A stretch of DNA of 64,000 bases from Schmidtea nova (lineage: Eukaryota). The notes below the pieces were generated by a model. That model ran no database searches, had not been told where the DNA came from, and worked only from the letters and a program-made list of their open reading frames with translations. Made by a program: the position numbers and the translations under genes. The stretch lies in assembly GCA_044892505.1 (NCBI GenBank), contig CM097884.1, positions 29,636,001 through 29,700,000 on the forward strand, in the 5' to 3' direction. The first letter of the stretch is position 1. Each line of letters opens with the position of its first letter. Of this stretch, positions 6,868-64,000 are shown in pieces.

Positions 6868-6878
6868 TCACGGGGGAA

Positions 6879-8247: not shown

Positions 8248-8410
8248 GGTCAGAATTTTAATATGGTTATGGTCAGAATTTTTATTACATTGGTCAGAAT
8301 TTATATTAAATGGTCAGAATACATCGGTCAGAATACTAGTGGTCAGAATAAATATGGTAATGGTCAGAATTTATATTAAATGGTCAGAATTTAAATTAAT
8401 CGGTAAAAAT
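8248..8410 (+). repeat. Left sub-terminal array of MULE: 8 x GGTCAGAAT
   Basis: Eight exact GGTCAGAAT motifs separated by short AT-rich spacers, plus a degenerate GGTAAAAAT. Confidence 0.85.
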
Positions 8411-21200: not shown

Positions 21201-24200
21201 ACGGAATATAATTCTAAATTAGACGATATTTCCTTAGACAATGGCAACCCAATTGAAGAAAATTTCGATTTGGAAAAAGAACATATAAAAGACAGATTAG
21301 AATCAGAAAACGAATTTGATAAAAGCAGAAAGACTTTAGGCATTAACAAAGAAAGTCAAACGATTGGAGAAGAAAGTCAATTAGAAAAAGAAAAATTCAT
21401 CAAGATTGTTATGAAGGAAAATCAAGAAAATTATGAGGTAATATTTCTTAAATATAATAAATTATAATTAAAAAAGATTTAGAGAATAAATATTTAGAAA
21501 AATAATAAAATATAACGAAAATAATTATACAAAACATACTTAAAAGCAAATATTAAAAAAGAAAACTTTAAATTGATTTGAAATTAAAGAAAAAACACAT
21601 ATATATATGTGTGTGTGTGTGTTTTTCTTTTTTTCTTTAATTTCAAATCAATTTAATTTATATATATGTAAAAGAATCGAAATAAAAAATGAAATATTAT
21701 AAAAATGAAATAAAATAATTGTTTTGAATGATTTTTTTTAATATTTTATTACGCTTTTAAGAAAAAGAATATAACAATGAAATAAAATAAAAAATAAAAC
21801 AGAATCCACTGTAATTTAATAAAATTTTTGAAGCAAAAATTAGAAAAAAACAAAAAATAAAATAAAGAAAATTAACGAGTAAAGAAAATTAAATTGAAAA
21901 CTTTAATAAAATAGTAACTAAATATAATATACATCAACTAAATACGAAATAGCTGACCAATTCATGTAATTCCATCTTTGCTTAAAGTAAAATTGAGAAT
22001 AAAGTCAAAAAAAATAATTAATCTAAAAAATTATAAAATGTATTCAGGCATGGAAATTTTACTACATTTGTTTTATGGAAGGAAAGATTATTGATTAAAG
22101 AAAATCAAAAGATATTTATCACCATTTTGAAGTAATATTTTATCATATTTTACCAATAGAAAAACATTAGAACAACAAAATGTTGATTAAATTTAAGAAT
22201 ATAGTAAATTATTTCGTAACTTGATAATATAAAAATAACAAAGCATATGAAAAAAATTTACACAACGTCAATAAACTTTCACGTTTTCTTTGGATAAGAA
22301 ATTCGAAATATGTCACCTTGAAATATGATTGAGACGATATTCCTTTTTTACTTCAATGCGTGGTTTCTTGAATTTTCTAAATATTTTACGTTAAAATATA
22401 TAGTTTTTTAAAACTTTTTCTCCTACGACCAACTGATAATATATTAAAGAAGAGCTGGTTTCGATACCACTCTCAGCCCCATCAATAATTGCGGGTATGC
22501 CATCATATTAATTTTTGTAATTTAAAGTTTCTTTACCGGTGCCACTCTAACAAGCAATTTTCCAGCAAGTCAGATCTGACACTTTGACTTTTTTTCCACC
22601 GTGATTGATTAAATTACCCTGATAATTATTGAGATTCATTTTTTTGTATTCTATCTGCAGTACCTTAAAGGGAACCCAAATGAATTATACCACTTTATTT
22701 GTTATAAATTGTCAATTTGCCACCAATTGAAAGTTTTTATCTTAACCAAACATGATTTTTACATTTTTTGCAATATTAATTATTTTTTTATATTCTCTAT
22801 TTCTTTTTAATTTTGTGTGATAATGTATAAGTCCAATAAAATGATGATAATTTTACTTTTTCAACTTTATTAACTGATAATTAAATAAAATTGTATTTAT
22901 AAAAATATTTTGAAATCGACGTTACCTTAATTTGACAATATTGTGTTGCAAATCGTGAATACAAATAATATCTTACGTAAAAATTTGTTCAGCCAATGGG
23001 AATATAATTAAATTTGTTGTATCTAATGAAATATTTAAATGAAGATTATTGACTATAAAAATTCGATTTGCTTCTTTAAATGTTACAAATATGGGTTTTA
23101 ATAAAATAAAATTACACAGAGGTTGCCTTTGAGTTGCAAGTTCTTAAATAATTATTAAAATCGTAATAATAAAACAATAAAAACGAATTTTAAAATTTAT
23201 TAAAAGTAGTTAAATGAATATTAATGCTAATTTAAATGCAATCTTCAATTCAAATGTAAATCGTTTCATTAAATTCAGATTAAAACTGAAAACATTGCAG
23301 TGGAGTCGAATCTCCCTGAATTGGTGGAAACAATTTTGGAATATGAGACAAGAAAAAGAGATAAGTCAACAGAATTCCGAACTGACATGATTGAAATGAA
23401 GAGCGAATTTTCGAAAGACACTCAAATAGTTGAAATAGATATCGGAAGCGTTAAAGACCGAAGAGATTTTAGTAAATACGCTCAAAGTCAACTAATAGAA
23501 GTAGGAACTGAAACATACGGAGATAAACATGAAGTATTAGTGAATGTTTTAACGAGCTATGAAGTGAAGTCAAAGGTTATCAACACATTAACAGATTTTA
23601 AGTTCGAAATGGTAGACTGTTGGAATTTTTCAGATGGAAAATGCGAAGAAAAATTGTCAGAAATCGCAATTGAAAGTACAACTAAAACAGTAGACAGTTC
23701 TAGCGAATATACAATAAAACTAACTGAAGTTCAAGCTAATGAATCAAAAGAATACTTTGATATTAGTATGGAAACGTTGCTCGTTGAAGTTGTCAATGAA
23801 TCAACAAGTTGCGAAGTGATTTGTAAATCTATTGAATGTGAAAGAACAGAATTAGTAGAAGAAGAAATAGTTGCAAAGACTAGTGAAGAAGAAAGAGCTG
23901 ACGTAAAAATGACAGAAGATGAGTGCATAGCTAGTGAAAAAGTGATGAGAAATATTGGAACAACTGCAAAATGTTCGATGATTGACATGATTTCAAATAA
24001 AGAAATAGATTTCAGTGAAAGCAGTTACGAAACCGAATACAGAGAGACTTATGAAAATAAATTATTTGAAACTGAACAGAGGAAACTCAAGACAATGGTA
24101 GCGACATCTGAGATTAAGTCTTGTTCCATTGATATTCAATTCGAAAGTAAAATATTTGATGTTCTATCTGAAACTGGAATCGAGTTCAAATCTTTGGTGA

Positions 24201-27200
24201 AAGATTCATCACATCATTTTGAGGTAAACTATTTTCATATATTTATCAAAGAACAATTTTCGATAAAATCTTGATTAAATTTAAGAATCAATCGTAAAAC
24301 CTTTCATAATTTCACAATACAAAAAACCATATCTTTTGCATGTGTGCATTAAGAAAATAATTGTTTTTTTAATTACATAAACAAATTGTAAATTGACATG
24401 ATATAAAAATTGAAATCTGTCCCCTTCATATATGATCGTTGAGTAATTTGAACAAAAAATCAAAATCAATTATATTATAATAATTATACATTTTCAACTT
24501 TATTAACTGATAATGAAATAAAATTGTATTTATAAAAATATTTTGAAATCGACGTTGACTTAATTTGACAATATTGTGTTGCAAATCGTGAATACAAATA
24601 ATATCTTACGTAAAAATTTGTTCAGCCAATGGGAATATAATTAAATTTGTTGTATCTAATGAAATATTTAAATGAAGATTATTGACTATAAAAATTCGAT
24701 TTGCTTCTTTAAATGTTACAAATATGGGTTTTAATAAAATAAAATTACACAGAGGTTGCCTTTGAGTTGCAAGTTCTTAAATAATTATTAAAATCGTAAT
24801 AATAAAACAATAAAACGAATTTTAAAATCATTAAAAGTAGTTAAATGAATATTAATGTTAATTTAAATGCAATCTTCAATTCAAATGTAAATGGTTTCAT
24901 TAAATTCAGATTAAAACTGAAAACATTGCAGTGGAGTCGAATCTCCCTGAATTGGTGGAAACAATTTTGGAATATGAGACAAGAAAAAGAGATAAGTCAA
25001 CAGAATTCCGAACTGACATGATTGAAATGAAGAGCGAATTTTCGAAAGACACTCAAATAGTTGAAATAGATATCGGAAGCGTTAAAGACCGAAGAGATTT
25101 TAGTAAATACGCTCAAAGTCAACTAATAGAAGTAGGAACTGAAACATACGGAGATAAACATGAAGTATTAGTGAATGTTTTAACGAGCTATGAAGTGAAG
25201 TCAAAGGTTATCAACACATTAACAGATTTTAAGTTCGAAATGGTAGACTGTTGGAATTTTTCAGATGGAAAATGCGAAGAAAAATTGTCAGAAATCGCAA
25301 TTGAAAGTACAACTAAAACAGTAGACAGTTCTAGCGAATATACAATAAAACTAACTGAAGTTCAAGCTAATGAATCAAAAGAATACTTTGATATTAGTAT
25401 GGAAACGTTGCTCGTTGAAGTTGTCAATGAATCAACAAGTTGCGAAGTGATTTGTAAATCTATTGAATGTGAAAGAACAGAATTAGTAGAAGAAGAAATA
25501 GTTGCAAAGACTAGTGAAGAAGAAAGAGCTGACGTAAAAATGACAGAAGATGAGTGCATAGCTAGTGAAAAAGTGATGAGAAATATTGGAACAACTGCAA
25601 AATGTTCGATGATTGACATGATTTCAAATAAAGAAATAGATTTCAGTGAAAGCAGTTACGAAACCGAATACAGAGAGACTTATGAAAATAAATTATTTGA
25701 AACTGAACAGAGGAAACTCAAGACAATGGTAGCGACATCTGAGATTAAGTCTTGTTCCATTGATATTCAATTCGAAAGTAAAATATTTGATGTTCTATCT
25801 GAAACTGGAATCGAGTTCAAATCTTTGGTGAAAGATTCATCACATCATTTTGAGGTAAACTATTTTCATATATTTATCAAAGAACAATTTTCGATAAAAT
25901 CTTGATTAAATTTAAGAATCAATCGTAAAACCTTTCATAATTTCACAATACAAAAAACCATATCTTTTGCATGTGTGCATTAAGAAAATAATTGTTTTTT
26001 TAATTACATAAACAAATTGTAAATTGACATGATATAAAAATTGAAATCTGTCCCCTTCATATATGATCGTTGAGTAATTTGAACAAAAAATCAAAATCAA
26101 TTATATTATAATAATTATACATTTTCAACTTTATTAACTGATAATGAAATAAAATTGTATTTATAAAAATATTTTGAAATCGACGTTGACTTAATTTGAC
26201 AATATTGTGTTGCAAATCGTGAATACAAATAATATCTTACGTAAAAATTTGTTCAGCCAATGGGAATATAATTAAATTTGTTGTATCTAATGAAATATTT
26301 AAATGAAGATTATTGACTATAAAAATTCGATTTGCTTCTTTAAATGTTACAAATATGGGTTTTAATAAAATAAAATTACACAGAGGTTGCCTTTGAGTTG
26401 CAAGTTCTTAAATAATTATTAAAATCGTAATAATAAAACAATAAAAACGAATTTTAAAATTTATTAAAAGTAGTTAAATGAATATTAATGCTAATTTAAA
26501 TGCAATCTTCAATTCAAATGTAAATGGTTTCATTAAATTCAGATTAAAACTGAAAACATTGCAGTGGAGTCGAATCTCCCTGAATTGGTGGAAACAATTT
26601 TGGAATATGAGACAAGAAAAAGAGATAAGTCAACAGAATTCCGAACTGACATGATTGAAATGAAGAGCGAATTTTCGAAAGACACTCAAATAGTTGAAAT
26701 AGATATCGGAAGCGTTAAAGACCGAAGAGATTTTAGTAAATACGCTCAAAGTCAACTAATAGAAGTAGGAACTGAAACATACGGAGATAAACATGAAGTA
26801 TTAGTGAATGTTTTAACGAGCTATGAAGTGAAGTCAAAGGTTATCAACACATTAACAGATTTTAAGTTCGAAATGGTAGACTGTTGGAATTTTTCAGATG
26901 GAAAATGCGAAGAAAAATTGTCAGAAATCGCAATTGAAAGTACAACTAAAACAGTAGACAGTTCTAGCGAATATACAATAAAACTAACTGAAGTTCAAGC
27001 TAATGAATCAAAAGAATACTTTGATATTAGTATGGAAACGTTGCTCGTTGAAGTTGTCAATGAATCAACAAGTTGCGAAGTGATTTGTAAATCTATTGAA
27101 TGTGAAAGAACAGAATTAGTAGAAGAAGAAATAGTTGCAAAGACTAGTGAAGAAGAAAGAGCTGACGTAAAAATGACAGAAGATGAGTGCATAGCTAGTG

Positions 27201-30200
27201 AAAAAGTGATGAGAAATATTGGAACAACTGCAAAATGTTCGATGATTGACATGATTTCAAATAAAGAAATAGATTTCAGTGAAAGCAGTTACGAAACCGA
27301 ATACAGAGAGACTTATGAAAATAAATTATTTGAAACTGAACAGAGGAAACTCAAGACAATGGTAGCGACATCTGAGATTAAGTCTTGTTCCATTGATATT
27401 CAATTCGAAAGTAAAATATTTGATGTTCTATCTGAAACTGGAATCGAGTTCAAATCTTTGGTGAAAGATTCATCACATCATTTTGAGGTAAACTATTTTC
27501 ATATATTTATCAAAGAACAATTTTCGATAAAATCTTGATTAAATTTAAGAATCAATCGTAAAACCTTTCATAATTTCACAATACAAAAACCATATCTTTT
27601 GCATGTGTGCATTAAGAAAATAATTGTTTTTTTAATTACATAAACAAATTGTAAATTGACATGATATAAAAATTGAAATCTGTCCCCTTCATATATGATC
27701 GTTGAGTAATTTGAACAAAAAATCAAAATCAATTATATTATAATAATTATACATTTTCAACTTTATTAACTGATAATGAAATAAAATTGTATTTATAAAA
27801 ATATTTTGAAATCGACGTTGACTTAATTTGACAATATTGTGTTGCAAATCGTGAATACAAATAATATCTTACGTAAAAATTTGTTCAGCCAATGGGAATA
27901 TAATTAAATTTGTTGTATCTAATGAAATATTTAAATGAAGATTATTGACTATAAAAATTCGATTTGCTTCTTTAAATGTTACAAATATGGGTTTTAATAA
28001 AATAAAATTACACAGAGGTTGCCTTTGAGTTGCAAGTTCTTAAATAATTATTAAAATCGTAATAATAAAACAATAAAAACGAATTTTAAAATTTATTAAA
28101 AGTAGTTAAATGAATATTAATGCTAATTTAAATGCAATCTTCAATTCAAATGTAAATGGTTTCATTAAATTCAGATTAAAACTGAAAACATTGCAGTGGA
28201 GTCGAATCTCCCTGAATTGGTGGAAACAATTTTGGAATATGAGACAAGAAAAAGAGATAAGTCAACAGAATTCCGAACTGACATGATTGAAATGAAGAGC
28301 GAATTTTCGAAAGACACTCAAATAGTTGAAATAGATATCGGAAGCGTTAAAGACCGAAGAGATTTTAGTAAATACGCTCAAAGTCAACTAATAGAAGTAG
28401 GAACTGAAACATACGGAGATAAACATGAAGTATTAGTGAATGTTTTAACGAGCTATGAAGTGAAGTCAAAGGTTATCAACACATTAACAGATTTTAAGTT
28501 CGAAATGGTAGACTGTTGGAATTTTTCAGATGGAAAATGCGAAGAAAAATTTGAAAAAAACTAAAATAGAAGACAGTACTAGCGAATATACAATAAAATT
28601 ATAAAAACCATATCTTTTGCATGTCTACTCTAACCTTCATCCTTTGAAATGTAAATTTTACATTGTATGTGCAAAGAGTTAATCTTACCTCATATTTCAA
28701 TGAGTGGATTTCAGTCGACTCTAAATACAAGTAGTTAAACTGAAAGATATAATATATTTTTTTAGAAATTTTTAAATTTTTAAGATATTCCTTTTATTGA
28801 TTCGTATGTAATGCGATAGATGAGGCCTTTCAGGTTGCTTTGCATATTTAATTAATGTTAAACTTCTTACGTCGCGAAGTATATTTACTGGGGTTCAGTG
28901 GTTTCGAAATGAACATAACTAAATGTATGAAATCATTTTTTTTTAATTACACAAATAAATTTACAATTATCATGTTATAAAAAATCGAAAAGTGTATAGT
29001 TGTTGAATAATTTTCTTTAACACCATTTTGAAATTTCTTTTTTAATTTTATAATATATCTTTTTAATTTATGAATTTATAATATTAATATGTTTATATAT
29101 TATATAATTATAAATAGTTTGAAAATTATATTTTGCAAAAACCTTTCAATAACAGAAATCTTTTATTAATGAATTGTTTTATTAAATTACTAACTCAAAT
29201 ATATGATAATACTTTCGATTTATCATAAACAGTTAAATTTTATATGCATAATCGATTATATCTTCATAGTTCCAAAGTTTAACTTTATCTACATAGTTTT
29301 AAATGAATTATTTCTTGGAAGTTAATTAAACTGGTAAATGTTACGTACAATTGAAATGTAAGTGTTATATTTAGGAATTCAATAATTAGTGTAGTCGATT
29401 AAATCAATCAATTTATTTACCAATGAATAAAAAAAAATTCTTATTTAAATATAGTATATTGATATATTTTAATTGAAAATTAAATAATGTTTTATCTTTT
29501 TTCTCTAGTTACTAGAATTTTATAGAAAAATTATTTAAATACTAAAACATCTATAAAATTATGAATTATTAAAAGACATAAAATAAAGAAGTTACTTATT
29601 TCTAAAATTGGTAAAATCAATTATTAACTAAAAACTGGTTCATGAATATATAATCTTTTTAATAACTTTAATTACTCTTGTTTATTTGTTAACCTCTTCA
29701 TTGCATTATTATTTCTTAGATTTATTAATTTACAAAATATTTCGAGTCATTTTTAGAACTGTTTTCTTGTGTTTAGATTAAATTTGAAAACATTGCAACT
29801 GAAACTGGAATAACAGAATTGATACATACGAGCTTGGAAAAAGATACAAAAGCTTCAAATAAGTTAACTGACTATAGAGCAGAGGCCATTGACATGAGCA
29901 ATGAATCATTCAAAGATAGTGAAATTGTAGAAGTTTCTTTCGAAAAACTCAAAGACACAGTTGACTTTAGCGGTAGTGTAGAAAGTAAAATGATTGAAGT
30001 AGGAACAGAAACTTTCGGAGAAAAGCATAATGTATTCATCGATACGCTTACAAGTCATGAAGCTGAAATTAAATTCGAAGAAACATTGACTGAGTTCATG
30101 TGTGAGTCGGTAAATAAAGAAAGCAGTTTTGAATGCAAATCAATTGAAGAAACCTGGAGTCAAGTTGGTGCAAAGGCAGTCGAAGTTGGTTCAGAATTCA

Positions 30201-33200
30201 GAAGCGTGATTGTAGAATGTTCAAGTGAATATACAATTAGTATGAGAGAAAGTCAGGTAGACCAAGCAATAGCAACTGAAGAAGTCGGTGTAATGACAGT
30301 AGAATTAGTAGTGATAGATGAGTCATCGGTGTTTGAATTGAGGTGCTGCACAGTTGAATGTGAAACTGTAGAAATCGTAGAAGAAATAATTCCTTTAGAG
30401 GCAAAGGAAGAGGAATCAGAAAGATTGTTAATTGAGAATGAAAGTGTAAGCTGGGAGATTCCAATGCTAGATATTGCTACTACAACAGTTAATCCGACAT
30501 TAGAAGATATTAGCACAGAAAATGTAATTGAGCATGTTGAATATAGTGGTGAATGGTGCCGAGAAATTAAGCATGAAAGTGAAATGTTTGAAACAGAGAA
30601 ATCAGGTTACTCAACAACGATCGTATCATCAGATGAAGACATTAAATATTGCTCAGTTGAAATACAATTCGAAGAAACAAAGTCTCGCAACATAGAATCT
30701 GGCTACGAAATCAAGTCAACAATGAAAGAATGTTACAGCGAAACAGAGGTAAATAAAATGAATTCATTTTTACAAATAATGTCACTTAATCACTGCCTAA
30801 AATCTATTATGATGTCTTTAAAGATAAATACTGTTTTGAAACCTTTATCATAATCTTTTATTTTATAATCATATTTTAACATTGTTTATTTGTTAACCTC
30901 TTCATTGCATTATTATTTCTTAGATTTATTAATTTACAAAATATTTCGAGTCATTTTTAGAACTGTTTTCTTGTGTTTAGATTAAATCTGAAAACATTGC
31001 AACTGAAACTGGAATAACAGAATTGACACATACGAGCTTGGAAAAAGATACAAAAGCTTCAAATAAGTTAACTGACTATAGAGCAGAGGCCATTGACATG
31101 AGCAGTGAATCATTCAAAGATAGTGAAATTGTAGAAATTTCTTTCGAAAAACTCAAAGACACAGCTGACTTCGGTAGTAGTGTAGAAAGTAAAATGATTG
31201 AAGTAGGAACAGAAACTTTCGGAGAAAAGCATAATGTATTCATCGATACGCTTACAAGTCATGAAGCTGAAATTAAATTCGAAGAAACATTGACTGAGTT
31301 CATGTGTGAGTCGGTAAATAGTGAAAGCAGTTTTGAATGCAAATCAATTGAAGAAAGCTGGAGTCAAGTTGGTGCAAAGGCAGTTGAAGTTGGTTCAGAA
31401 TTCAGAAGCGTGATTGTAGAATGTTCAAGTGAATATACAATTAGTATGAGAGAAAGTCAGGTAGACCAAGCAATAGCAACTGAAGAAGTCGGTGTAATGA
31501 CAGTAGAATTAGTAGTGATAGATGAGTCATCGGTGTTTGAATTGAGGTGCTGCACAGTTGAATGTGAAACTGTAGAAATCGTAGAAGAAATAATTCCTTT
31601 AGAGGCAAAGGAAGAGGAATCAGAAAGATTGTTAATTGAGAATGAAAGTTTAAGCTGGGAGATTCCAATGCTAGATATTGCTACTACAACAGTTAAGCCG
31701 ACATTAGAAGATATTAGCACAGAAAATGTAATTGAGCATGTTGAATATAGTGGTGAATGGTGCCGAGAAATTAAGCATGAAAGTGAAATGTTTGAAACAG
31801 AGAAATCAGGTTACTCAACAACGATCGTATCATCAGATGAAGACATTAAATATTGCTCAGTTGAAATACAATTCGAAGAAACAAAGTCTCGCAACATAGA
31901 ATCTGGCTACGAAATCAAGTCAACAATGAAAGAATGTTACAGCGAAACAGAGGTAAATAAAATGAATTCATTTTTACAAATAATGTCACTTAATCACTGC
32001 CTAAAATCTATTATGATGTCTTTAAAGATAAATACTGTTTTGAAACCTTTATCATAATCTTTTATTTTAAATTCATATTTTAACATAGTTTATTTGTTAA
32101 CCTCTTCATTGCATTATTATTTCTTAGATTTATTAATTTACAAAATATTTCGAGTCATTTTTAGAACTGTTTTCTTGTGTTTAGATTAAATCTGAAAACA
32201 TTGCAACTGAAACTGGAATAACAGAATTGATACATACGAGCTTGGAAAAAGATACAAAAGCTTCAAATAAGTTAACTGACTATAGAGCAAAGGCCATTGA
32301 CATGAGCAGTGAATCATTCAAAGATAGTGAAATTGTAGAAGTTTCTTTCGAAAAACTCAAAGACACAGCTGACTTCGGTAGTAGTGTAGAAAGTAAAATG
32401 ATTGAAGTAGGAACAGAAACTTTCGGAGAAAAGCATAATGTATTCATCGATACGCTTACAAGTCATGAAGCTGAAATTAAATTCGAAGAAACATTGACTG
32501 AGTTCATGTGTGAGTCGGTAAATAGTGAAAGCAGTTTTGAATGCAAATCAATTGAAGAAACCTGGAGTCAAGTTGGTGCAAAGGCAGTTGAAGTTGGTTC
32601 AGAATTCAGAAGCGTGATTGTAGAATGTTCAAGTGAATATACAATTAGTATGAGAGAAAGTCAGGTAGACCAAGCAATAGCAACTGAAGAAGTCGGTGTA
32701 ATGACAGTAGAATTAGTAGTGATAGATGAGTCATCGGTGTTTGAATTGAGGTGCTGCACAGTTGAATGTGAAACTGTAGAAATCGTAGAAGAAATAATTC
32801 CTTTAGAGGCAAAGGAAGAGGAATCAGAAAGATTGTTAATTGAGAATGAAAGTTTAAGCTGGGAGATTCCAATGCTAGATATTGCTACTACAACAGTTAA
32901 GCCGACATTAGAAGATATTAGCACAGAAAATGTAATTGAGCATGTTGAATATAGTGGTGAATGGTGCCGAGAAATTAAGCATGAAAGTGAAATGTTTGAA
33001 ACAGAGAAATCAGGTTACTCAACAACGATCGTATCATCAGATGAAGACAATAAATATTGCTCAGTTGAAATACAATTCGAAGAAACAAAGTCTCGCAACA
33101 TAGAATCTGGCTACGAAATCAAGTCAACAATGAAAGAATGTTACAGCGAAACAGAGGTAAATAAAATGAATTCATTTTTACAAAAAATGTCACTTAATCA

Positions 33201-54200: not shown

Positions 54201-57200
54201 AAGCAGTTTTGAATGCAAATCAATTGAAGAAACCTGGAGTCAAGTTGGTGCAAAGGCAGTTGAAGTTGGTTCAGAATTCAGAAGCGTGATTGTAGAATGT
54301 TCAAGTGAATATACAATTAGTATGAGAGAAAGTCAGGTAGACCAAGCAATAGCAACTGAAGAAGTCGGTGTAATGACAGTAGAATTAGTAGTGATAGATG
54401 AGTCATCGGTGTTTGAATTGAGGTGCTGCACAGTTGAATGTGAAACTGTAGAAATCGTAGAAGAAATAATTCCTTTAGAGGCAAAGGAAGAGGAATCAGA
54501 AAGATTGTTAATTGAGAATGAAAGTGTAAGCTGGGAGATTCCAATGCTAGATATTGCTACTACAACAGTTAAGCCGACATTAGAAGATATTAGCACAGAA
54601 AAAGTTATTGAGCATGTTGAATATAGTGGTGAATGGTGCCGAGAAATTAAGCATGAAAGTGAAATGTTTGAAACAGAGAAATCAGGTTACTCAACAACGA
54701 TCGTATCATCAGATGAAGACATTAAATATTGCTCAGTTGAAATACAATTCGAAGAAACAAAGTCTCGCAACATAGAATCTGGCTACGAAATCAAGTCAAC
54801 AATGAAAGAATGTTACAGCGAAACAGAGGTAAATAAAATGAATTCAGTTTTACAAAAAATGTCACTTAATCACTGCCTAAAATCTATTATGATGTCTTTA
54901 AAGATAAATACTGTTTTGAAACCTTTATCATAATCTTTTATTTTAAATTCATATTTTAACATAGTTTATTTGTTAACCTCTTCATTGCATTATTATTTCT
55001 TAGATTTATTAATTTACAAAATATTTCGAGTCATTTTTAGAACTGTTTTCTTGTGTTTAGATTAAATCTGAAAACATTGCAACTGAAACTGGAATAACAG
55101 AATTGATACATACGAGCTTGGAAAAAGATACAAAAGCTTCAAATAAGTTAACTGACTATAGAGCAGAGGCCATTGACATGAGCAGTGAATCATTCAAAGA
55201 TAGTGAAATTGTAGAAGTTTCTTTCGAAAAACTCAAAGACACAGCTGACTTCGGTAGTAGTGTAGAAAGTAAAATGATTGAAGTAGGAACAGAAACTTTC
55301 GGAGAAAAGCATAATGTATTCATCGATACGCTTACAAGTCATGAAGCTGAAATTAAATTCGAAGAAACATTGACTGAGTTCATGTGTGAGTCGGTAAATA
55401 GTGAAAGCAGTTTTGAATGCAAATCAATTGAAGAAACCTGGAGTCAAGTTGGTGCAAAGGCAGTTGAAGTTGGTTCAGAATTCAGAAGCGTGATTGTAGA
55501 ATGTTCAAGTGAATATACAATTAGTATGAGAGAAAGTCAGGTAGACCAAGCAATAGCAACTGAAGAAGTCGGTGTAATGACAGTAGAATTAGTAGTGATA
55601 GATGAGTCATCGGTGTTTGAATTGAGGTGCTGCACAGTTGAATGTGAAACTGTAGAAATCGTAGAAGAAATAATTCCTTTAGAGGCAAAGGAAGAGGAAT
55701 CAGAAAGATTGTTAATTGAGAATGAAAGTGTAAGCTGGGAGATTCCAATGCTAGATATTGCTACTACAACAGTTAAGCCGACATTAGAAGATATTAGCAC
55801 AGAAAATGTAATTGAGCATGTTGAATATAGTGGTGAATGGTGCCGAGAAATTAAGCATGAAAGTGAAATGTTTGAAACAGAGAAATCAGGTTACTCAACA
55901 ACGATCGTATCATCAGATGAAGACATTAAATATTGCTCAGTTGAAATACAATTCGAAGAAACAAAGTCTCGCAACATAGAATCTGGCTACGAAATCAAGT
56001 CAACAATGAAAGAATGTTACAGCGAAACAGAGGTAAATAAAATGAATTCAGTTTTACAAAAAATGTCACTTAATCACTGCCTAAAATCTATTATGATGTC
56101 TTTAAAGATAAATACTGTTTTGAAACCTTTATCATAATCTTTTATTTTAAATTCATATTTTAACATAGTTTATTTGTTAACCTCTTCATTGCATTATTAT
56201 TTCTTAGATTTATTAATTTACAAAATATTTCGAGTCATTTTTAGAACTGTTTTCTTGTGTTTAGATTAAATCTGAAAACATTGCAACTGAAACTGGAATA
56301 ACAGAATTGATACATACGAGCTTGGAAAAAGATACAAAAGCTTCAAATAAGTTAACTGACTATAGAGCAGAGGCCATTGACATGAGCAGTGAATCATTCA
56401 AAGATAGTGAAATTGTAGAAGTTTCTTTCGAAAAACTCAAAGACACAGCTGACTTCGGTAGTAGTGTAGAAAGTAAAATGATTGAAGTAGGAACAGAAAC
56501 TTTCGGAGAAAAGCATAATGTATTCATCGATACGCTTACAAGTCATGAAGCTGAAATTAAATTCGAAGAAACATTGACTGAGTTCATGTGTGAGTCGGTA
56601 AATAGTGAAAGCAGTTTTGAATGCAAATCAATTGAAGAAACCTGGAGTCAAGTTGGTGCAAAGGCAGTTGAAGTTGGTACAGAATTCAGAAGCGTGATTG
56701 TAGAATGTTCAAGTGAATATACAATTAGTATGAGAGAAAGTCAGGTAGACCAAGCAATAGCAACTGAAGAAGTCGGTGTAATGACAGTAGAATTAGTAGT
56801 GATAGATGAGTCATCGGTGTTTGAATTGAGGTGCTGCACAGTTGAATGTGAAACTGTAGAAATCGTAGAAGAAATAATTCCTTTAGAGGCAAAGGAAGAG
56901 GAATCAGAAAGATTGTTAATTGAGAATGAAAGTGTAAGCTGGGAGATTCCAATGCTAGATATTGCTACTACAACAGTTAAGCCGACATTAGAAGATATTA
57001 GCACAGAAAATGTAATTGAGCATGTTGAATATAGTGGTGAATGGTGCCGAGAAATTAAGCATGAAAGTGAAATGTTTGAAACAGAGAAATCAGGTTACTC
57101 AACAACGATCGTATCATCAGATGAAGACATTAAATATTGCTCAGTTGAAATACAATTCGAAGAAACAAAGTCTCGCAACATAGAATCTGGCTACGAAATC

Positions 57201-60200
57201 AAGTCAACAATGAAAGAATGTTACAGCGAAACAGAGGTAAATAAAATGAATTCAGTTTTACAAAAAATGTCACTTAATCACTGCCTAAAATCTATTATGA
57301 TGTCTTTAAAGATAAATACTGTTTTGAAACCTTTATCATAATCTTTTATTTTAAATTCATATTTTAACATAGTTTATTTGTTAACCTCTTCATTGCATTA
57401 TTATTTCTTAGATTTATTAATTTACAAAATATTTCGAGTCATTTTTAGAACTGTTTTCTTGTGTTTAGATTAAATCTGAAAACATTGCAACTGAAACTGG
57501 AATAACAGAATTGATACATACGAGCTTGGAAAAAGATACAAAAGCTTCAAATAAGTTAACTGACTATAGAGCAGAGGCCATTGACATGAGCAGTGAATCA
57601 TTCAAAGATAGTGAAATTGTAGAAGTTTCTTTCGAAAAACTCAAAGACACAGCTGACTTCGGTAGTAGTGTAGAAAGTAAAATGATTGAAGTAGGAACAG
57701 AAACTTTCGGAGAAAAGCATAATGTATTCATCGATACGCTTACAAGTCATGAAGCTGAAATTAAATTCGAAGAAACATTGACTGAGTTCATGTGTGAGTC
57801 GGTAAATAGTGAAAGCAGTTTTGAATGCAAATCAATTGAAGAAACCTGGAGTCAAGTTGGTGCAAAGGCAGTTGAAGTTGGTTCAGAATTCAGAAGCGTG
57901 ATTGTAGAATGTTCAAGTGAATATACAATTAGTATGAGAGAAAGTCAGGTAGACCAAGCAATAGCAACTGAAGACGTCGGTGTAATGACAGTAGAATTAG
58001 TAGTGATAGATGAGTCATCGGTGTTTGAATTGAGGTGCTGCACAGTTGAATGTGAAACTGTAGAAATTGTAGAAGAAATAATTCCTTTAGAGGCAAAGGA
58101 AGAGGAATCAGAAAGATTGTTAATTGAGAATGAAAGTGTAAGCTGGGAGATTCCAATGCTAGATATTGCTACTACAACAGTTAAGCCGACATTAGAAGAT
58201 ATTACCACAGAAAAAGTTATTGAGCATGTTGAATATAGTGGTGAATGGTGCCGAGAAATTAAGCATGAAAGTGAAATGTTTGAAACAGAGAAATCAGGTT
58301 ACTCAACAACGATCGTATCATCAGATGAAGACATTAAATATTGCTCAGTTGAAATACAATTCGAAGAAACAAAGTCTCGCAACATAGAATCTGGCTACGA
58401 AATCAAGTCAACAATGAAAGAATGTTACAGCGAAACAGAGGTAAATAAAATGAATTCAGTTTTACAAAAAATGTCACTTAATCACTGCCTAAAATCTATT
58501 ATGATGTCTTTAAAGATAAATACTGTTTTGAAACCTTTATCATAATCTTTTATTTTAAATTCATATTTTAACATAGTTTATTTGTTAACCTCTTCATTGC
58601 ATTATTATTTCTTAGATTTATTAATTTACAAAATATTTCGAGTCATTTTTAGAACTGTTTTCTTGTGTTTAGATTAAATCTGAAAACATTGCAACTGAAA
58701 CTGGAATAACAGAATTGATACATACGAGCTTGGAAAAAGATACAAAAGCTTCAAATAAGTTAACTGACTATAGAGCAGAGGCCATTGACATGAGCAGTGA
58801 ATCATTCAAAGATAGTGAAATTGTAGAAGTTTCTTTCGAAAAACTCAAAGACACAGCTGACTTCGGTAGTAGTGTAGAAAGTAAAATGATTGAAGTAGGA
58901 ACAGAAACTTTCGGAGAAAAGCATAATGTATTCATCGATACGCTTACAAGTCATGAAGCTGAAATTAAATTCGAAGAAACATTGACTGAGTTCATGTGTG
59001 AGTCGGTAAATAGTGAAAGCAGTTTTGAATGCAAATCAATTGAAGAAACCTGGAGTCAAGTTGGTGCAAAGGCAGTTGAAGTTGGTTCAGAATTCAGAAG
59101 CGTGATTGTAGAATGTTCAAGTGAATATACAATTAGTATGAGAGAAAGTCAGGTAGACCAAGCAATAGCAACTGAAGAAGTCGGTGTAATGACAGTAGAA
59201 TTAGTAGTGATAGATGAGTCATCGGTGTTTGAATTGAGGTGCTGCACAGTTGAATGTGAAACTGTAGAAATCGTAGAAGAAATAATTCCTTTAGAGGCAA
59301 AGGAAGAGGAATCAGAAAGATTGTTAATTGAGAATGAAAGTGTAAGCTGGGAGATTCCAATGCTAGATATTGCTACTACAACAGTTAAGCCGACATTAGA
59401 AGATATTAGCACAGAAAATGTAATTGAGCATGTTGAATATAGTGGTGAATGGTGCCGAGAAATTAAGCATGAAAGTGAAATGTTTGAAACAGAGAAATCA
59501 GGTTACTCAACAACGATCGTATCATCAGATGAAGACATTAAATATTGCTCAGTTGAAATACAATTCGAAGAAACAAAGTCTCGCAACATAGAATCTGGCT
59601 ACGAAATCAAGTCAACAATGAAAGAATGTTACAGCGAAACAGAGGTAAATAAAATGAATTCATTTTTACAAATAATGTCACTTAATCACTGCCTAAAATC
59701 TATTATGATGTCTTTAAAGATAAATACTGTTTTGAAACCTTTATCATAATCTTTTATTTTAAATTCATATTTTAACATAGTTTATTTGTTAACCTCTTCA
59801 TTGCATTATTATTTCTTAGATTTATTAATTTACAAAATATTTCGAGTCATTTTTAGAACTGTTTTCTTGTGTTTAGATTAAATCTGAAAACATTGCAACT
59901 GAAACTGGAATAACAGAATTGATACATACGAGCTTGGAAAAAGATACAAAAGCTTCAAATAAGTTAACTGACTATAGAGCAGAGGCCATTGACATGAGCA
60001 GTGAATCATTCAAAGATAGTGAAATTGTAGAAGTTTCTTTCGAAAAACTCAAAGACACAGCTGACTTCGGTAGTAGTGTAGAAAGTAAAATGATTGAAGT
60101 AGGAACAGAAACTTTCGGAGAAAAGCATAATGTATTCATCGATACGCTTACAAGTCATGAAGCTGAAATTAAATTCGAAGAAACATTGACTGAGTTCATG

Positions 60201-63200
60201 TGTGAGTCGGTAAATAGTGAAAGCAGTTTTGAATGCAAATCAATTGAAGAAACCTGGAGTCAAGTTGGTGCAAAGGCAGTTGAAGTTGGTTCAGAATTCA
60301 GAAGCGTGATTGTAGAATGTTCAAGTGAATATACAATTAGTATGAGAGAAAGTCAGGTAGACCAAGCAATAGCAACTGAAGACGTCGGTGTAATGACAGT
60401 AGAATTAGTAGTGATAGATGAGTCATTGGTGTTTGAATTGAGGTGCTGCACAGTTGAATGTGAAACTGTAGAAATTGTAGAAGAAATAATTCCTTTAGAG
60501 GCAAAGGAAGAGGAATCAGAAAGATTGTTAATTGAGAATGAAAGTGTAAGCTGGGAGATTCCAATGCTAGATATTGCTACTACAACAGTTAAGCCGACAT
60601 TAGAAGATATTACCACAGAAAAAGTTATTGAGCATGTTGAATATAGTGGTGAATGGTGCCGAGAAATTAAGCATGAAAGTGAAATGTTTGAAACAGAGAA
60701 ATCAGGTTACTCAACAACGATCGTATCATCAGATGAAGACATTAAATATTGCTCAGTTGAAATACAATTCGAAGAAACAAAGTCTCGCAACATAGAATCT
60801 GGCTACGAAATCAAGTCAACAATGAAAGAATGTTACAGCGAAACAGAGGTAAATAAAATGAATTCAGTTTTACAAAAAATGTCACTTAATCACTGCCTAA
60901 AATCTATTATGATGTCTTTAAAGATAAATACTGTTTTGAAACCTTTATCATAATCTTTTATTTTAAATTCATATTTTAACATAGTTTATTTGTTAACCTC
61001 TTCATTGCATTATTATTTCTTAGATTTATTAATTTACAAAATATTTCGAGTCATTTTTAGAACTGTTTTCTTGTGTTTAGATTAAATCTGAAAACATTGC
61101 AACTGAAACTGGAATAACAGAATTGATACATACGAGCTTGGAAAAAGATACAAAAGCTTCAAATAAGTTAACTGACTATAGAGCAGAGGCCATTGACATG
61201 AGCAGTGAATCATTCAAAGATAGTGAAATTGTAGAAGTTTCTTTCGAAAAACTCAAAGACACAGCTGACTTCGGTAGTAGTGTAGAAAGTAAAATGATTG
61301 AAGTAGGAACAGAAACTTTCGGAGAAAAGCATAATGTATTCATCGATACGCTTACAAGTCATGAAGCTGAAATTAAATTCGAAGAAACATTGACTGAGTT
61401 CATGTGTGAGTCGGTAAATAGTGAAAGCAGTTTTGAATGCAAATCAATTGAAGAAACCTGGAGTCAAGTTGGTGCAAAGGCAGTTGAAGTTGGTTCAGAA
61501 TTCAGAAGCGTGATTGTAGAATGTTCAAGTGAATATACAATTAGTATGAGAGAAAGTCAGGTAGACCAAGCAATAGCAACTGAAGAAGTCGGTGTAATGA
61601 CAGTAGAATTAGTAGTGATAGATGAGTCATCGGTGTTTGAATTGAGGTGCTGCACAGTTGAATGTGAAACTGTAGAAATCGTAGAAGAAATAATTCCTTT
61701 AGAGGCAAAGGAAGAGGAATCAGAAAGATTGTTAATTGAGAATGAAAGTGTAAGCTGGGAGATTCCAATGCTAGATATTGCTACTACAACAGTTAAGCCG
61801 ACATTAGAAGATATTAGCACAGAAAATGTAATTGAGCATGTTGAATATAGTGGTGAATGGTGCCGAGAAATTAAGCATGAAAGTGAAATGTTTGAAACAG
61901 AGAAATCAGGTTACTCAACAACGATCGTATCATCAGATGAAGACATTAAATATTGCTCAGTTGAAATACAATTCGAAGAAACAAAGTCTCGCAACATAGA
62001 ATCTGGCTACGAAATCAAGTCAACAATGAAAGAATGTTACAGCGAAACAGAGGTAAATAAAATGAATTCATTTTTACAAATAATGTCACTTAATCACTGC
62101 CTAAAATCTATTATGATGTCTTTAAAGATAAATACTGTTTTGAAACCTTTATCATAATCTTTTATTTTAAATTCATATTTTAACATAGTTTATTTGTTAA
62201 CCTCTTCATTGCATTATTATTTCTTAGATTTATTAATTTACAAAATATTTCGAGTCATTTTTAGAACTGTTTTCTTGTGTTTAGATTAAATCTGAAAACA
62301 TTGCAACTGAAACTGGAATAACAGAATTGATACATACGAGCTTGGAAAAAGATACAAAAGCTTCAAATAAGTTAACTGACTATAGAGCAGAGGCCATTGA
62401 CATGAGCAGTGAATCATTCAAAGATAGTGAAATTGTAGAAGTTTCTTTCGAAAAACTCAAAGACACAGCTGACTTCGGTAGTAGTGTAGAAAGTAAAATG
62501 ATTGAAGTAGGAACAGAAACTTTCGGAGAAAAGCATAATGTATTCATCGATACGCTTACAAGTCATGAAGCTGAAATTAAATTCGAAGAAACATTGACTG
62601 AGTTCATGTGTGAGTCGGTAAATAGTGAAAGCAGTTTTGAATGCAAATCAATTGAAGAAACCTGGAGTCAAGTTGGTGCAAAGGCAGTTGAAGTTGGTTC
62701 AGAATTCAGAAGCGTGATTGTAGAATGTTCAAGTGAATATACAATTAGTATGAGAGAAAGTCAGGTAGACCAAGCAATAGCAACTGAAGAAGTCGGTGTA
62801 ATGACAGTAGAATTAGTAGTGATAGATGAGTCATCGGTGTTTGAATTGAGGTGCTGCACAGTTGAATGTGAAACTGTAGAAATCGTAGAAGAAATAATTC
62901 CTTTAGAGGCAAAGGAAGAGGAATCAGAAAGATTGTTAATTGAGAATGAAAGTGTAAGCTGGGAGATTCCAATGCTAGATATTGCTACTACAACAGTTAA
63001 GCCGACATTAGAAGATATTAGCACAGAAAATGTAATTGAGCATGTTGAATATAGTGGTGAATGGTGCCGAGAAATTAAGCATGAAAGTGAAATGTTTGAA
63101 ACAGAGAAATCAGGTTACTCAACAACGATCGTATCATCAGATGAAGACATTAAATATTGCTCAGTTGAAATACAATTCGAAGAAACAAAGTCTCGCAACA

Positions 63201-64000
63201 TAGAATCTGGCTACGAAATCAAGTCAACAATGAAAGAATGTTACAGCGAAACAGAGGTAAATAAAATGAATTCAGTTTTACAAAAAATGTCACTTAATCA
63301 CTGCCTAAAATCTATTATGATGTCTTTAAAGATAAATACTGTTTTGAAACCTTTATCATAATCTTTTATTTTAAATTCATATTTTAACATAGTTTATTTG
63401 TTAACCTCTTTATTGCATTATTATTTCTTAGATTTATTAATTTACAAAATATTTCGAGTCATTTTTAGAACTGTTTTCTTGTGTTTAGATTAAATCTGAA
63501 AACATTGCAACTGAAACTGGAATAACAGAATTGATACATACGAGCTTGGAAAAAGATACAAAAGCTTCAAATAAGTTAACTGACTATAGAGCAGAGGCCA
63601 TTGACATGAGCAGTGAATCATTCAAAGATAGTGAAATTGTAGAAGTTTCTTTCGAAAAACTCAAAGACACAGCTGACTTCGGTAGTAGTGTAGAAAGTAA
63701 AATGATTGAAGTAGGAACAGAAACTTTCGGAGAAAAGCATAATGTATTCATCGATACGCTTACAAGTCATGAAGCTGAAATTAAATTCGAAGAAACATTG
63801 ACTGAGTTCATGTGTGAGTCGGTAAATAGTGAAAGCAGTTTTGAATGCAAATCAATTGAAGAAACCTGGAGTCAAGTTGGTGCAAAGGCAGTTGAAGTTG
63901 GTTCAGAATTCAGAAGCGTGATTGTAGAATGTTCAAGTGAATATACAATTAGTATGAGAGAAAGTCAGGTAGACCAAGCAATAGCAACTGAAGAAGTCGG
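13467..64000 (+). CDS. Giant multi-exon plakin-family (spectrin-repeat + SH3) gene with tandem exon arrays; 3' end beyond the window, 5' end unresolved
   Basis: Manually inferred GT-AG exons, all joining in frame: 13467-13508, 13558-13674, 13724-13771, 13826-13897, 13946-14020, 14078-14173, 14673-14801, 14849-15204, 17100-17353, 17404-17462, 17523-17638, 19097-21437, then 3 x 945-nt and 28 x 972-nt exons. Phase-1 and phase-2 junctions (15204/17100, 17353/17404, 17638/19097) match reciprocally. About 11,250 aa through the 28th large exon. Confidence 0.75.
15446..15500. mobile_element. Isolated hAT-like terminal fragment
   Basis: GC-rich GGCCGTGTGCGCTGCACACCTGCACAC...TCGGCTCTG resembles a hAT right end. 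No partner end or TSD found. Confidence 0.35.
15811..15906. repeat. Foldback (palindromic) repeat, copy 1
   Basis: AAGTACACGATATT / AATATCGTGTACTT, GGCAC / GTGCC, CTTTATCA / TGATAAAG and GTGTG / CACAC nested inverted pairs. Confidence 0.75.
16506..16747. mobile_element. piggyBac-like MITE (242 bp)
   Basis: TTAA|CCCTTTCAAAGG ... CCTTAGAAAGGG|TTAA: TIRs match at 11 of 12 positions, with TTAA on both sides. Confidence 0.75.
17100..17638 (+). CDS. Three exons continuing the plakin helical region
   Basis: 17100-17353 (ELQNQLTATWEELIKML...), 17404-17462 and 17523-17638 (VIERIRRPVEIKDMNDLKEEWQ...). Introns of 50 and 60 nt; the donor at 17463 could alternatively be 17475 (same phase). Confidence 0.7.
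17770..17845. repeat. Foldback repeat, copy 2
   Basis: AACCTTTATC..GTGTGCA / TGCACAC..GATAAAGGTT; same core as the copies at 15.8 and 18.3 kb. Confidence 0.7.
18205..18371. repeat. Foldback repeat, copy 3 (longest arms, MITE-like)
   Basis: AATAATTTTCATATTAATAATT / AATTATTAATATGAAAATTATT outer arms; CTTTATCAAGTGT / ACACTTGATAAAG inner stem. Confidence 0.75.
19097..21437 (+). CDS. 2341-nt exon: end of helical region, acidic linker, 7 x 44-aa repeats, Glu/Lys-rich segment
   Basis: Acceptor TTTATAG at 19096 and donor GAG|GTAATA at 21437/21438. Covers most of the 788-aa track ORF 19101-21467. Confidence 0.8.
19755..20678 (+). repeat. Coding tandem repeat, 7 x 132 bp (44 aa)
   Basis: Units such as RIRKIETYSIKDFVRETKDRNEMEILLNEIFSSLTRISTGVQTE end at 19886, 20018, 20150, 20282, 20414, 20546 and 20678. 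Confidence 0.9.
21568..21656. repeat. Intronic inverted repeat with (AT)n(GT)n loop
   Basis: TTAAATTGATTTGAAATTAAAGAA / TTCTTTAATTTCAAATCAATTTAA, perfect 24-bp arms. Confidence 0.75.
23279..27487 (+). CDS. Type-A tandem exons: 3 x 945 nt (315 aa), phase 0-0, identical protein sequence
   Basis: Exons 23279-24223, 24910-25854 and 26543-27487. Acceptor AAATTCAG|ATT AAA ACT; donor TTT GAG|GTAAAC. Confidence 0.8.
28175..28564 (+). pseudogene. Broken fourth type-A exon (intact acceptor, frameshift/stop, donor deleted); pseudo-exon or alternative last exon
   Basis: Matches copies 1-3 up to about 28551, then a short deletion gives TAA at 28562-28564. The sequence then jumps to intron-like AAAAACCATATCTTTTGCATGT. 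Confidence 0.7.
29680..64000 (+). repeat. Type-B tandem array, period exactly 1204 bp, at least 28.5 copies, continues past the window end
   Basis: Track ORFs recur every 1204 bp from 29819 to 62327. Copies differ only by scattered substitutions. Confidence 0.98.
29777..64000 (+). CDS. Type-B tandem exons: 28 complete x 972 nt (324 aa) + 1 partial, phase 0-0
   Basis: Exon starts at 29777 + 1204n (29777, 30981, 32185 ... 61081, 62285, 63489). Acceptor TTCTTGTGTTTAG|ATT AAA; donor ACA GAG|GTAAAT; 232-nt introns. No stop or frameshift in any complete exon copy. Confidence 0.8.

What the first reader, a model, noticed from the sequence alone, without database searches (positions are those of the whole stretch)
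23279..64000. All array exons are symmetric (phase 0-0): a potentially length-tunable molecular ruler
Seen: 945 = 315 x 3 and 972 = 324 x 3, and the preceding exon also ends in phase 0 (21437). Any subset of the 31+ exons can therefore be included without a frameshift. Known: titin and nebulin change length by skipping repeated symmetric exons. Inference: splicing or allelic copy number could set linker length in 324-aa steps. Near-identical splice sites in every unit would make skipping and back-splicing (circRNA) mechanistically easy.
Basis: inference. Interest (0 to 1): 0.7.

Follow-up and report, generated by a model that had tools for sequence, protein, structure and literature searches.

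The report
Giant gene of 127 frame-neutral repeated exons
What looks like satellite DNA is the first quarter of a 155-kb run of 127 almost identical, real protein-coding exons in one giant flatworm gene; every exon keeps the reading frame, but such an array cannot exist otherwise, so this alone does not show that the protein's length is tuned.

Summary
Observation confirmed and extended. The window holds three 945-nt exons (period about 1632) and 28 complete plus one partial 972-nt exons (period 1204). All are open, flanked by AG and GT, and in phase 0-0. The preceding exon ends in phase 0 at 21437. One exception is a truncated fourth A unit (28175-28601), which keeps its acceptor but has lost its donor. 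The array continues 115 kb past the window: 124 B exons at a single locus, about 41,100 codons.

The exons are real. Relatives in other species keep the unit at 323-326 codons with the same AG/GT borders, and dN/dS is 0.11-0.28. A public protein from a close relative joins unit to unit and unit to tail exon exactly at the predicted junctions. The flanks suggest a plakin-type cytolinker.

The "tunable ruler" reading is untested. Frame symmetry is a precondition of any coding exon array. Short 231-232-nt introns with identical sites favour consecutive inclusion. The unit is polyanionic with no predicted fold, so a spacer or spring fits better than a ruler. Evolutionary copy-number turnover (concerted evolution) is supported. 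The scan had already noted the 3' end of this gene (s1-529857).

The parts
14780..15205 (+). Open frame holding a plakin-type SH3 domain; a candidate upstream exon of the same gene
   Evidence: Pfam SH3_10 (PF17902): 30.2 bits against a cut-off of 22.8, E 4.7e-7; sequence. That it belongs to the same transcript is inferred from strand and proximity only.
19101..21437 (+). Large exon preceding the array (779 codons from the first ATG of the open frame). It ends in phase 0 at GAG|GTAATA and contains 132-nt (44-aa) tandem repeats at 20041-20492.
   Evidence: No Pfam family.
23279..24223 (+). A-type exon 1: 945 nt, 315 codons, phase 0-0
   Evidence: It is 36% identical over its full length to the B unit, E 1e-49.
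24910..25854 (+). A-type exon 2: 945 nt, phase 0-0
26543..27487 (+). A-type exon 3: 945 nt, phase 0-0
28175..28601 (+). Remnant of a fourth A-type exon. The acceptor is intact. A 17-nt deletion is followed by loss of the 3' half of the exon, the donor and about 94 nt of intron. There is a stop at codon 129. It acts as a decoy acceptor inside the 2289-nt A3-to-B1 intron.
29777..30748 (+). B-type exon 1: 972 nt, 324 codons, phase 0-0. It is the most divergent B copy (15 differences from B2).
30749..30980 (+). B-type intron: 232 nt (231 nt in 32 of 123 units), GC 21% against 35% in the exon, with stops in all three frames
30981..64000 (+). B units 2-28 (exon plus intron, period 1204) and the first 512 nt of B exon 29. 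The array runs on for 95 more units beyond the window, to G000:C3:29814808.

Best explanation
The region is the 5' quarter of a 155-kb tandem exon-intron array: 3 intact A units, one dead A remnant and 124 B units. The array forms the middle of one giant protein-coding gene of a planarian flatworm.

Shown: each unit is a real coding exon of 315 or 324 codons in phase 0-0. The same unit, with the same borders, occurs in tandem in other species under purifying selection. The reading frame carries through the array into two conserved tail exons.

Inferred:
1. The exons are by default spliced consecutively, because each donor lies 231-232 nt from an identical acceptor.
2. The array arose and is kept homogeneous by unequal crossing-over and gene conversion. 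This can only happen without destroying the gene if the unit is a multiple of three, so symmetry is the entry ticket for such an array and not a regulatory device.
3. Protein length is therefore set mainly by genomic copy number, which drifts over evolutionary time and probably between individuals.
4. The encoded chain (about 41,100 residues, 20% Glu, net charge -51 per unit, no predicted fold) serves as a very long polyanionic spacer or entropic spring. It sits between a plakin-type head (SH3_10 exon upstream) and a plectin-repeat-like tail, in the place of the rod of smaller plakins. It is not a rigid ruler.
For: - Exon anatomy and identical splice contexts in all 124 B units. The array is a single locus.
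- Chance of such an open frame: 4e-13 per exon.
- No stop among the 94 variable exon columns where 6.6 are expected, and no exon indel, while the intron is 231 or 232 nt.
- Between the two B subfamilies the exon differs by 1.5% and the intron by 8.2%.
- A and B units are 36% identical over their full length, while their introns do not align.
- Homologous units in other organisms are 969, 975, 975 and 978 nt, with AG|...GAG|GT borders. They sit in tandem with 265-280-nt introns in L022. dN/dS is 0.11-0.24 between species and 0.23-0.28 between neighbouring copies in L022.
- P0008 (UniParc UPI000600EB6D) reads ...SEIE|IKSENIATE... and ...SEIE|FKNTIFE...tail. This is unit joined to unit and unit joined to tail exon at exactly the predicted junctions. 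It is 87% identical in the unit and 78% in the tail.
- Tail exon 1 (phase 0 to phase 2) joins the final exon in frame at ...TTTAG|A.
- SH3_10 scores above the cut-off. Three plectin-like 38-aa repeats are visible in the last exon, and the Pfam Plectin score is 20.2 against a cut-off of 20.5.
- Concerted evolution and block structure.
- The longest exactly repeated stretch is 4.4 kb, so long reads can resolve the array.
- No fold, and an acidic composition.
Against: - No RNA reads from this species could be examined. Expression, full inclusion and the 5' connection to the SH3 exon are therefore unproven here.
- The origin of P0008 (cDNA or a gene model made from a collapsed assembly) is unknown. 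It ends exactly at an exon border, which would also fit a gene model.
- Young variants among the B copies show no excess of synonymous change: 18 synonymous and 78 non-synonymous against a neutral expectation of 20 and 70. Individual copies are therefore under weak constraint.
- The A4 remnant keeps an acceptor identical to the functional ones. If it is used, translation would stop before the B array.
- Plakin membership rests on one domain above threshold and one just below it. No PDB sequence match and no homologue of the last exon were found.
- The low AlphaFold confidence may reflect the shallow 16-sequence alignment and not true disorder.
Confidence: 0.62

Rival explanations
1. One reading: the cell sets the length of the protein by regulated skipping of repeated symmetric exons, as in the titin I-band and nebulin. 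Back-splicing between identical sites would give circular RNAs as a by-product.
For: Every unit is in phase 0-0 with identical sites, so any subset is in frame. Giant sarcomeric genes rich in symmetric exons exist (PMC9222585). The gene must already skip at least one identical acceptor, the A4 remnant, to reach the B array. This shows that non-adjacent pairing happens once per transcript.
Against: Symmetry is required of any coding exon array, so it is not evidence for regulation. All 124 acceptor 21-mers and donor 14-mers are identical, and 123 introns differ at only 32 columns. No sequence feature therefore marks particular exons for regulation. Introns of 231-232 nt favour nearest-neighbour pairing (inference from established knowledge of intron definition). 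The only spliced product on record shows consecutive joining. No isoform data exist.
Confidence: 0.13
2. Protein length is set by allelic copy number, as in a coding VNTR such as the LPA kringle IV-2 repeat: individuals carry different numbers of units and so make proteins that differ by 324-residue steps. This overlaps with the best explanation. It is listed apart because it is the second half of the reader's claim.
For: Signs of ongoing unequal exchange: 99% identity within the array against 87% to the orthologue. Divergence rises steadily with lag, from 2.9 differences at lag 1 to 7.6 at lag 24. There are block-wise subfamilies and short alternating patterns, and runs of up to 4 identical units.
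Against: Only one haplotype of one individual is available. No second copy of the array exists in the assembly. Reads could not be consulted.
Confidence: 0.55
3. Most of the B array is not translated. One possibility is that transcripts use the A4 decoy acceptor and terminate. The other is that the recent 124-fold expansion is a neutral or selfish satellite-like amplification of an exon-intron unit that the gene tolerates, for instance by skipping most of it.
For: Young variants look neutral: dN/dS is about 1.2 relative to expectation. Diversity within each subfamily is equal in exon and intron. The A4 remnant carries a stop. No expression data were obtained.
Against: There are no stops and no frameshifts in 124 x 324 codons, where 6.6 stop-creating variants are expected. 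The exon diverges five times more slowly than the intron between subfamilies. Tandem arrays of the same unit are conserved under purifying selection in several other species. The tail exons stay in frame and are 78% conserved. P0008 joins the last unit to the tail.
Confidence: 0.12

Closest known systems
Titin (I-band Ig/PEVK exons) and nebulin (super-repeat exons)
   Same: Giant structural proteins encoded by many repeated exons that are overwhelmingly symmetric. PMC9222585 reports over 73% symmetric exons for TTN and OBSCN and 97% for NEB. Skipping exons changes length without a frameshift.
   Different: Their exons are diverged (each has its own sequence and regulatory context), encode known folds (Ig, FN3, nebulin repeats), and their differential splicing is documented. 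Here 124 exons are 99% identical with identical splice sites, the unit is an orphan 324-residue acidic module with no predicted fold, and no splicing data exist.
LPA (apolipoprotein(a)) kringle IV type 2 repeat (from my own knowledge, not tested here)
   Same: A tandem exon-intron unit, near-identical between copies and in frame, whose genomic copy number sets protein size in steps.
   Different: The KIV-2 unit has two exons and encodes a folded kringle, with up to about 40 copies, and its polymorphism is measured. Here the unit has one exon and 124 copies, and its polymorphism is unknown.
C. elegans ANC-1 (nesprin-1/2 orthologue)
   Same: [quoted passage not shown] The repeats act as a spacer or scaffold between terminal binding domains.
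   Different: ANC-1 has 6 repeats against 124 here. The ANC-1 repeats are predicted helical and spectrin-like. ANC-1 has CH and KASH ends, not plakin SH3 and plectin-like ends.
Plakin family (plectin, desmoplakin, epiplakin; Shot and VAB-10 plakin-repeat isoforms)
   Same: A plakin-type SH3 domain lies upstream and plectin-repeat-like motifs lie in the last exon, giving the head - long middle - tail layout of cytolinkers. Gigantic repeat-rich isoforms are known in Drosophila Shot (PMC2173965, listed).
   Different: The middle is not a coiled-coil rod, spectrin repeats or plakin repeats. It is an orphan acidic unit repeated 127 times, one exon each. The plectin-repeat match is just under Pfam's cut-off.

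Membership tests
Tandem arrays of symmetric coding exons (titin/nebulin type) | Exon length is a multiple of three, with the same phase at both ends | tested here: met
   945 and 972 nt, phase 0-0, in 3 + 124 units. One truncated remnant is the exception.
Tandem arrays of symmetric coding exons (titin/nebulin type) | The exons are really coding (conserved under purifying selection and joined in mRNA) | tested here: met
   dN/dS 0.11-0.28. Borders are conserved in 4 other loci. P0008 shows unit-to-unit and unit-to-tail junctions, though its origin as cDNA is not certain.
Tandem arrays of symmetric coding exons (titin/nebulin type) | Documented differential inclusion of the repeated exons | not testable with these tools
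No isoforms were found in the protein databases.
Coding VNTR with exon-intron units (LPA KIV-2 type) | Near-identical in-frame exon-intron units in tandem at one locus | tested here: met
   Mean 1.1% exon divergence, period 1203/1204, a single locus with 124 matches.
Coding VNTR with exon-intron units (LPA KIV-2 type) | Copy number differs between alleles or individuals | not testable with these tools
   Only one haplotype is in the assembly and there was no access to reads.
Plakin family of cytolinkers | Plakin domain with its embedded SH3 | tested here: met
   Pfam SH3_10 at 30.2 bits against a cut-off of 22.8, at window 14780-15205. Flanking spectrin-repeat exons were not identified, and linkage to the array transcript is inferred.
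Plakin family of cytolinkers | Plectin (plakin) repeats at the C-terminus | tested here: inconclusive
   Pfam Plectin scores 20.2 bits, just under the 20.5 cut-off. Three repeats of about 38 aa with the pattern A-x3-G-[LW]-[IVL]...F-E-x-A are visible. There was no PDB sequence hit, no homologues, and the AF2 model was unusable.
Plakin family of cytolinkers | Central coiled-coil rod or spectrin-repeat rod | tested here: not met
   The middle is the acidic 324-residue unit. It has no Pfam family, no predicted helices or any fold and no look-alike in the ESM Atlas.
Plakin family of cytolinkers | N-terminal calponin-homology actin-binding domain (spectraplakins, plectin) | not tested
   The 100 kb upstream is dominated by transposon open frames. 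Short exons were not searched family by family.

The most novel reading that the evidence does not exclude
The gene makes the longest polypeptide known in an animal: at least about 42,700 residues and about 4.8 MDa if all units are included, which is longer than titin. Its polyanionic middle would be varied in 324-residue steps, both by allelic copy number and by cell-type-specific skipping among identical exons, so that a plakin-type cytolinker acts as an adjustable spring or spacer.
Probability: 0.12. Interest if true: 0.8.

Novelty: new member of a known kind. Interest (0 to 1): 0.45.

Why it matters
If the whole array is translated, this would be one of the largest proteins of any animal. 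It would be built from an orphan acidic module found in only a handful of sequence clusters among 1.84 billion.

It is also a clean natural case for two questions. How does a spliceosome handle more than a hundred identical donor-acceptor pairs in a row? How does concerted evolution keep 120,000 coding bases open while individual copies are almost free of selection?

The specific point of the finding, phase symmetry, is ordinary: it is what allows such arrays to exist. The interesting questions are whether length varies between cells or individuals and what a 41,000-residue polyanion does between a plakin head and tail. Those need RNA, protein and population data.

Tried and rejected
- **Spliced-junction scan:** an exact 30-nt junction pattern found nothing in the metagenome contigs. 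This is uninformative.
- **Whole-unit search:** a DNA search of the own genome with the whole unit was not scored because there were too many candidates. A 28-nt donor pattern replaced it.
- **Unit identity:** no significant Pfam hit, no usable ESM Atlas hit, and AlphaFold with a 16-row alignment gave pLDDT 33.6. No fold search was run on such a model.
- **Tail identity:** PDB sequence searches with the SH3 frame and the last exon gave nothing significant. A word-indexed homologue search with the last exon gave nothing. A single-sequence AlphaFold model reached pLDDT 31.5. A whole-genome Pfam Plectin scan gave no match anywhere, the control genomes included. A whole-genome SH3_10 scan listed three other loci but not this one.
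- **Bacterial origin, rejected:** one homologue sits beside bacterial genes, but that scaffold (L021) is a chimera: 780 nt at 36% GC joined to 58% GC DNA.
- **C-terminal membrane anchor, rejected:** the hydrophobic stretch after ...DQDYN in the first tail exon is intron read-through. P0008 stops at the donor, and the next exon joins in phase.
- **Longer spliced relatives:** a search with P0008 returned only P0008 itself.
Full report
**What is in the sequence**

A k-mer spacing analysis shows two tandem periods: about 1632 nt from 22858 to about 29000, and 1204 nt from there to the window end. TRF missed both because its period limit is 500.

Each unit holds one long open frame on the + strand.

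| Feature | A units | B units |
|---|---|---|
| Acceptor | AAATTCAG\|ATTAAAAC | TTGTGTTTAG\|ATTAAA |
| Donor | TTTGAG\|GTAAAC | ACAGAG\|GTAAATA |
| Exon | 945 nt = 315 codons | 972 nt = 324 codons |
| Intron | 686-688 nt | 232 nt |
| Positions | 23279-24223, 24910-25854, 26543-27487 | 29777-30748, then every 1204 nt |

These were read directly. All exons begin and end on codon boundaries.

- The window has 3 A exons, 28 complete B exons and one B exon cut by the window end.
- The exon before the array ends in phase 0 at 21437 (GAG|GTAATA).
- The open frame is not chance. At the exon's base composition the probability of 324 stop-free codons is 4e-13. The other five frames hold 7-46 stops, and the intron has stops in all three frames. 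GC is 35% in the exon and 21% in the intron.

**Two corrections to the observation**

1. There is a fourth A unit whose acceptor (28174/28175) is identical to the others.
   - Its exon has a 17-nt deletion and then breaks off. The 3' half of the exon, the donor and about 94 nt of intron are missing, and the frame stops at codon 129.
   - It now lies inside a 2289-nt intron between A3 and B1. A full-length message has to ignore it.
2. The window shows only a quarter of the array.
   - I fetched 200 kb downstream.
   - The B units continue to G000:C3:29814808, giving 124 B exons. Every one is 972 nt and open, with the same 21-nt acceptor and 14-nt donor context.
   - A 28-nt donor pattern occurs exactly 124 times in the 1.25-Gb genome. 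All matches are on the + strand, and the 100 that were listed are all on this contig.
   - The array encodes 3 x 315 + 124 x 324 = 41,121 codons.

**Are these real exons?**

Several independent lines say yes.

- *Within the array.* Copies differ by 1.1% on average, with 94 variable columns. None creates a stop, where 6.6 stop-creating changes are expected from the observed mutation spectrum. No exon has an indel, although the intron comes in 231- and 232-nt forms.
- *Between the two B subfamilies.* The exon consensus differs by 1.5% and the intron by 8.2%.
- *A against B.* The units are 36% identical over their whole length (E 1e-49) and differ by in-frame indels. Their introns do not align.
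- *Other species.* A word-indexed search and a full HMMER profile search of 1.84 billion representatives found the unit in only 8 representative clusters.
  - Where DNA is available, the unit is again one exon of 969, 975, 975 or 978 nt with AG|...GAG|GT borders.
  - In L022, three such exons stand in tandem with 264-279-nt introns.
  - Contig lengths of 1.2-1.3 kb for most hits are what a collapsed tandem array gives.
  - dN/dS is 0.11-0.24 between species and 0.23-0.28 between neighbouring copies in L022.
- *A spliced product.* P0008 (UniParc UPI000600EB6D, 1003 aa) comes from a close relative. It is 87% identical in the unit and 78% in the tail.
  - It reads part of a unit, then ...SEIE|IKSENIATE..., then a full 324-residue unit, then ...SEIE|FKNTIFE... 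running into the homologue of the exon that follows the array here.
  - These are exactly the junctions predicted from the GT/AG sites.
  - I could not learn whether P0008 comes from cDNA or from a gene model, so it is good but not final evidence of splicing.

**Gene context**

After the last B exon comes a 1321-nt intron. It is followed by an exon of 1619 nt (C3:29816130-29817748) that starts in phase 0 and ends ...AACAG|GTATTC in phase 2.

A final exon follows (C3:29820419-29821250 plus a stop). Its acceptor TTTAG|A restores the frame.

- That last exon shows three ~38-residue repeats with a plectin-repeat-like pattern. Pfam Plectin scores 20.2 bits against a cut-off of 20.5.
- Upstream, the open frame 14780-15205 carries a plakin-type SH3 domain (SH3_10, 30.2 bits against 22.8).
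That note called it a repeated-exon gene with a plectin-type tail in a flatworm.

I regard plakin membership as likely but not established. PDB sequence searches, a homologue search and a single-sequence fold of the tail gave nothing. The 100 kb upstream is mostly transposons.

Counting only the exon before the array, the array and the two tail exons gives about 42,700 residues. The exons were analysed one by one.

**What the unit is**

- It matches no Pfam family and has no look-alike in the ESM Atlas.
- AlphaFold with a 16-sequence alignment gives a mean pLDDT of 33.6 and no secondary structure.
- Composition: 20% Glu, 13% Ser, 9% Thr, 18% Ile+Val, 9 Cys, net charge -51 per unit, pI 4.2. This is on the disordered side of the charge-hydropathy boundary, though only just.

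Either it is a non-globular polyanionic chain or it is an orphan fold that a shallow alignment cannot reveal.

**How the array evolves**

- Units are 99% alike within the genome but 87% alike to the orthologue.
- Mean difference grows steadily with distance along the array, from 2.9 at lag 1 to 7.6 at lag 24.
- Units 2-46 and 48-124 form two subfamilies, with a mosaic of 231- and 232-nt introns in between. The first unit is the most divergent.

This is the usual signature of unequal crossing-over and gene conversion. It supports copy-number change over evolutionary time.

Young variants are not enriched for synonymous changes: 18 synonymous and 78 non-synonymous, against a neutral 20 and 70. 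Diversity within each subfamily is equal in exon and intron. Selection on any one of 124 copies is therefore weak. What selection removes is stops and frameshifts, and over longer times amino-acid change.

The longest exactly repeated stretch is 4.4 kb. Long reads can anchor the assembly, and the count of 124 is credible, but I did not verify it against reads.

It is true that any subset of units can be joined in frame. It is also true that titin, obscurin and nebulin are rich in symmetric exons (PMC9222585).

But a tandemly duplicated exon can stay in a coding gene only if its length is a multiple of three. Symmetry is therefore guaranteed once the array is coding, and it carries no extra information about regulation.

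The anatomy argues for consecutive inclusion as the default.

- Introns are 231-232 nt long and all sites are identical. Each donor's nearest partner is therefore as good as any other. This is inference from established knowledge of intron-definition splicing.
- There is no copy-specific sequence near the sites for a regulator to read.
- Occasional stochastic skipping over 127 junctions is plausible and would blur length by a few units. That is noise and not tuning.
- The one place where an identical acceptor must be passed over (A4) shows that non-adjacent pairing occurs. There the decoy lacks a donor.

'Ruler' also seems the wrong physical picture for a chain with no predicted fold and about -6,300 net charges. 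A spacer or entropic spring in a cytolinker is the better guess.

Allelic copy-number variation is likely on general grounds and from the concerted-evolution signature. It could not be tested.

**What could not be done**

No RNA or DNA reads were laid, so expression, isoforms, circular RNA and polymorphism all remain open. An exact junction search in the metagenome contigs found nothing, which is uninformative.

**Verdict**

This is a new member of a known kind: a giant structural gene built from a homogenised array of symmetric exons. It is remarkable for its scale and for its orphan acidic unit. The scan had already noted the other end of the same gene.

Noticed in passing
window 28175-28601: A dead fourth A unit keeps a perfect acceptor but has no donor and carries a stop at codon 129. 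An in-frame GT at 28460 (GAA|GTGAAG), also present in A1-A3, would make a 285-nt symmetric mini-exon if it were ever used with this acceptor.
   Followed up: partly
G000:C3:29816130-29817748 (L012:6130-7748), the first exon after the array: It contains several TQT motifs (ISTQTEDE, GETQTSLIE, DEETQTELD, DETQTKFG). All are conserved in the orthologue P0008, although the exon is only 78% identical overall.
   Followed up: partly
B array, units 2-46 against units 48-124 (window 30981 onward and L001-L012): Between the two subfamilies the intron differs by 8.2% but the exon by only 1.5%. The exon differences are 3 synonymous and 12 non-synonymous, which is a neutral-looking ratio at a five-fold lower rate. 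Exon-biased gene conversion or selection at the nucleotide level could explain this. It is not resolved.
   Followed up: partly
L021 (ENA ERZ28573565 scaffold_17422): This metagenome scaffold joins 780 nt of a homologous repeat unit (36% GC) to bacterial genes (Wzy_C and a polysaccharide deacetylase, 58% GC). It is an assembly chimera and not a bacterial copy of the unit.
   Followed up: yes
window 837-11761: A cluster of transposon open frames lies upstream of the gene body: reverse transcriptase (RVT_1) at 837-4487, RNase H-like and integrase pieces at 5177-6528, a MULE transposase at 9116-9841 and a hAT dimerisation domain at 11369-11761.
   Followed up: no
G000:C3:29851902-29862080, minus strand (L016-L017): An unbroken open frame of 3393 codons lies on the opposite strand about 37 kb downstream of the array. 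It was not examined.
   Followed up: no
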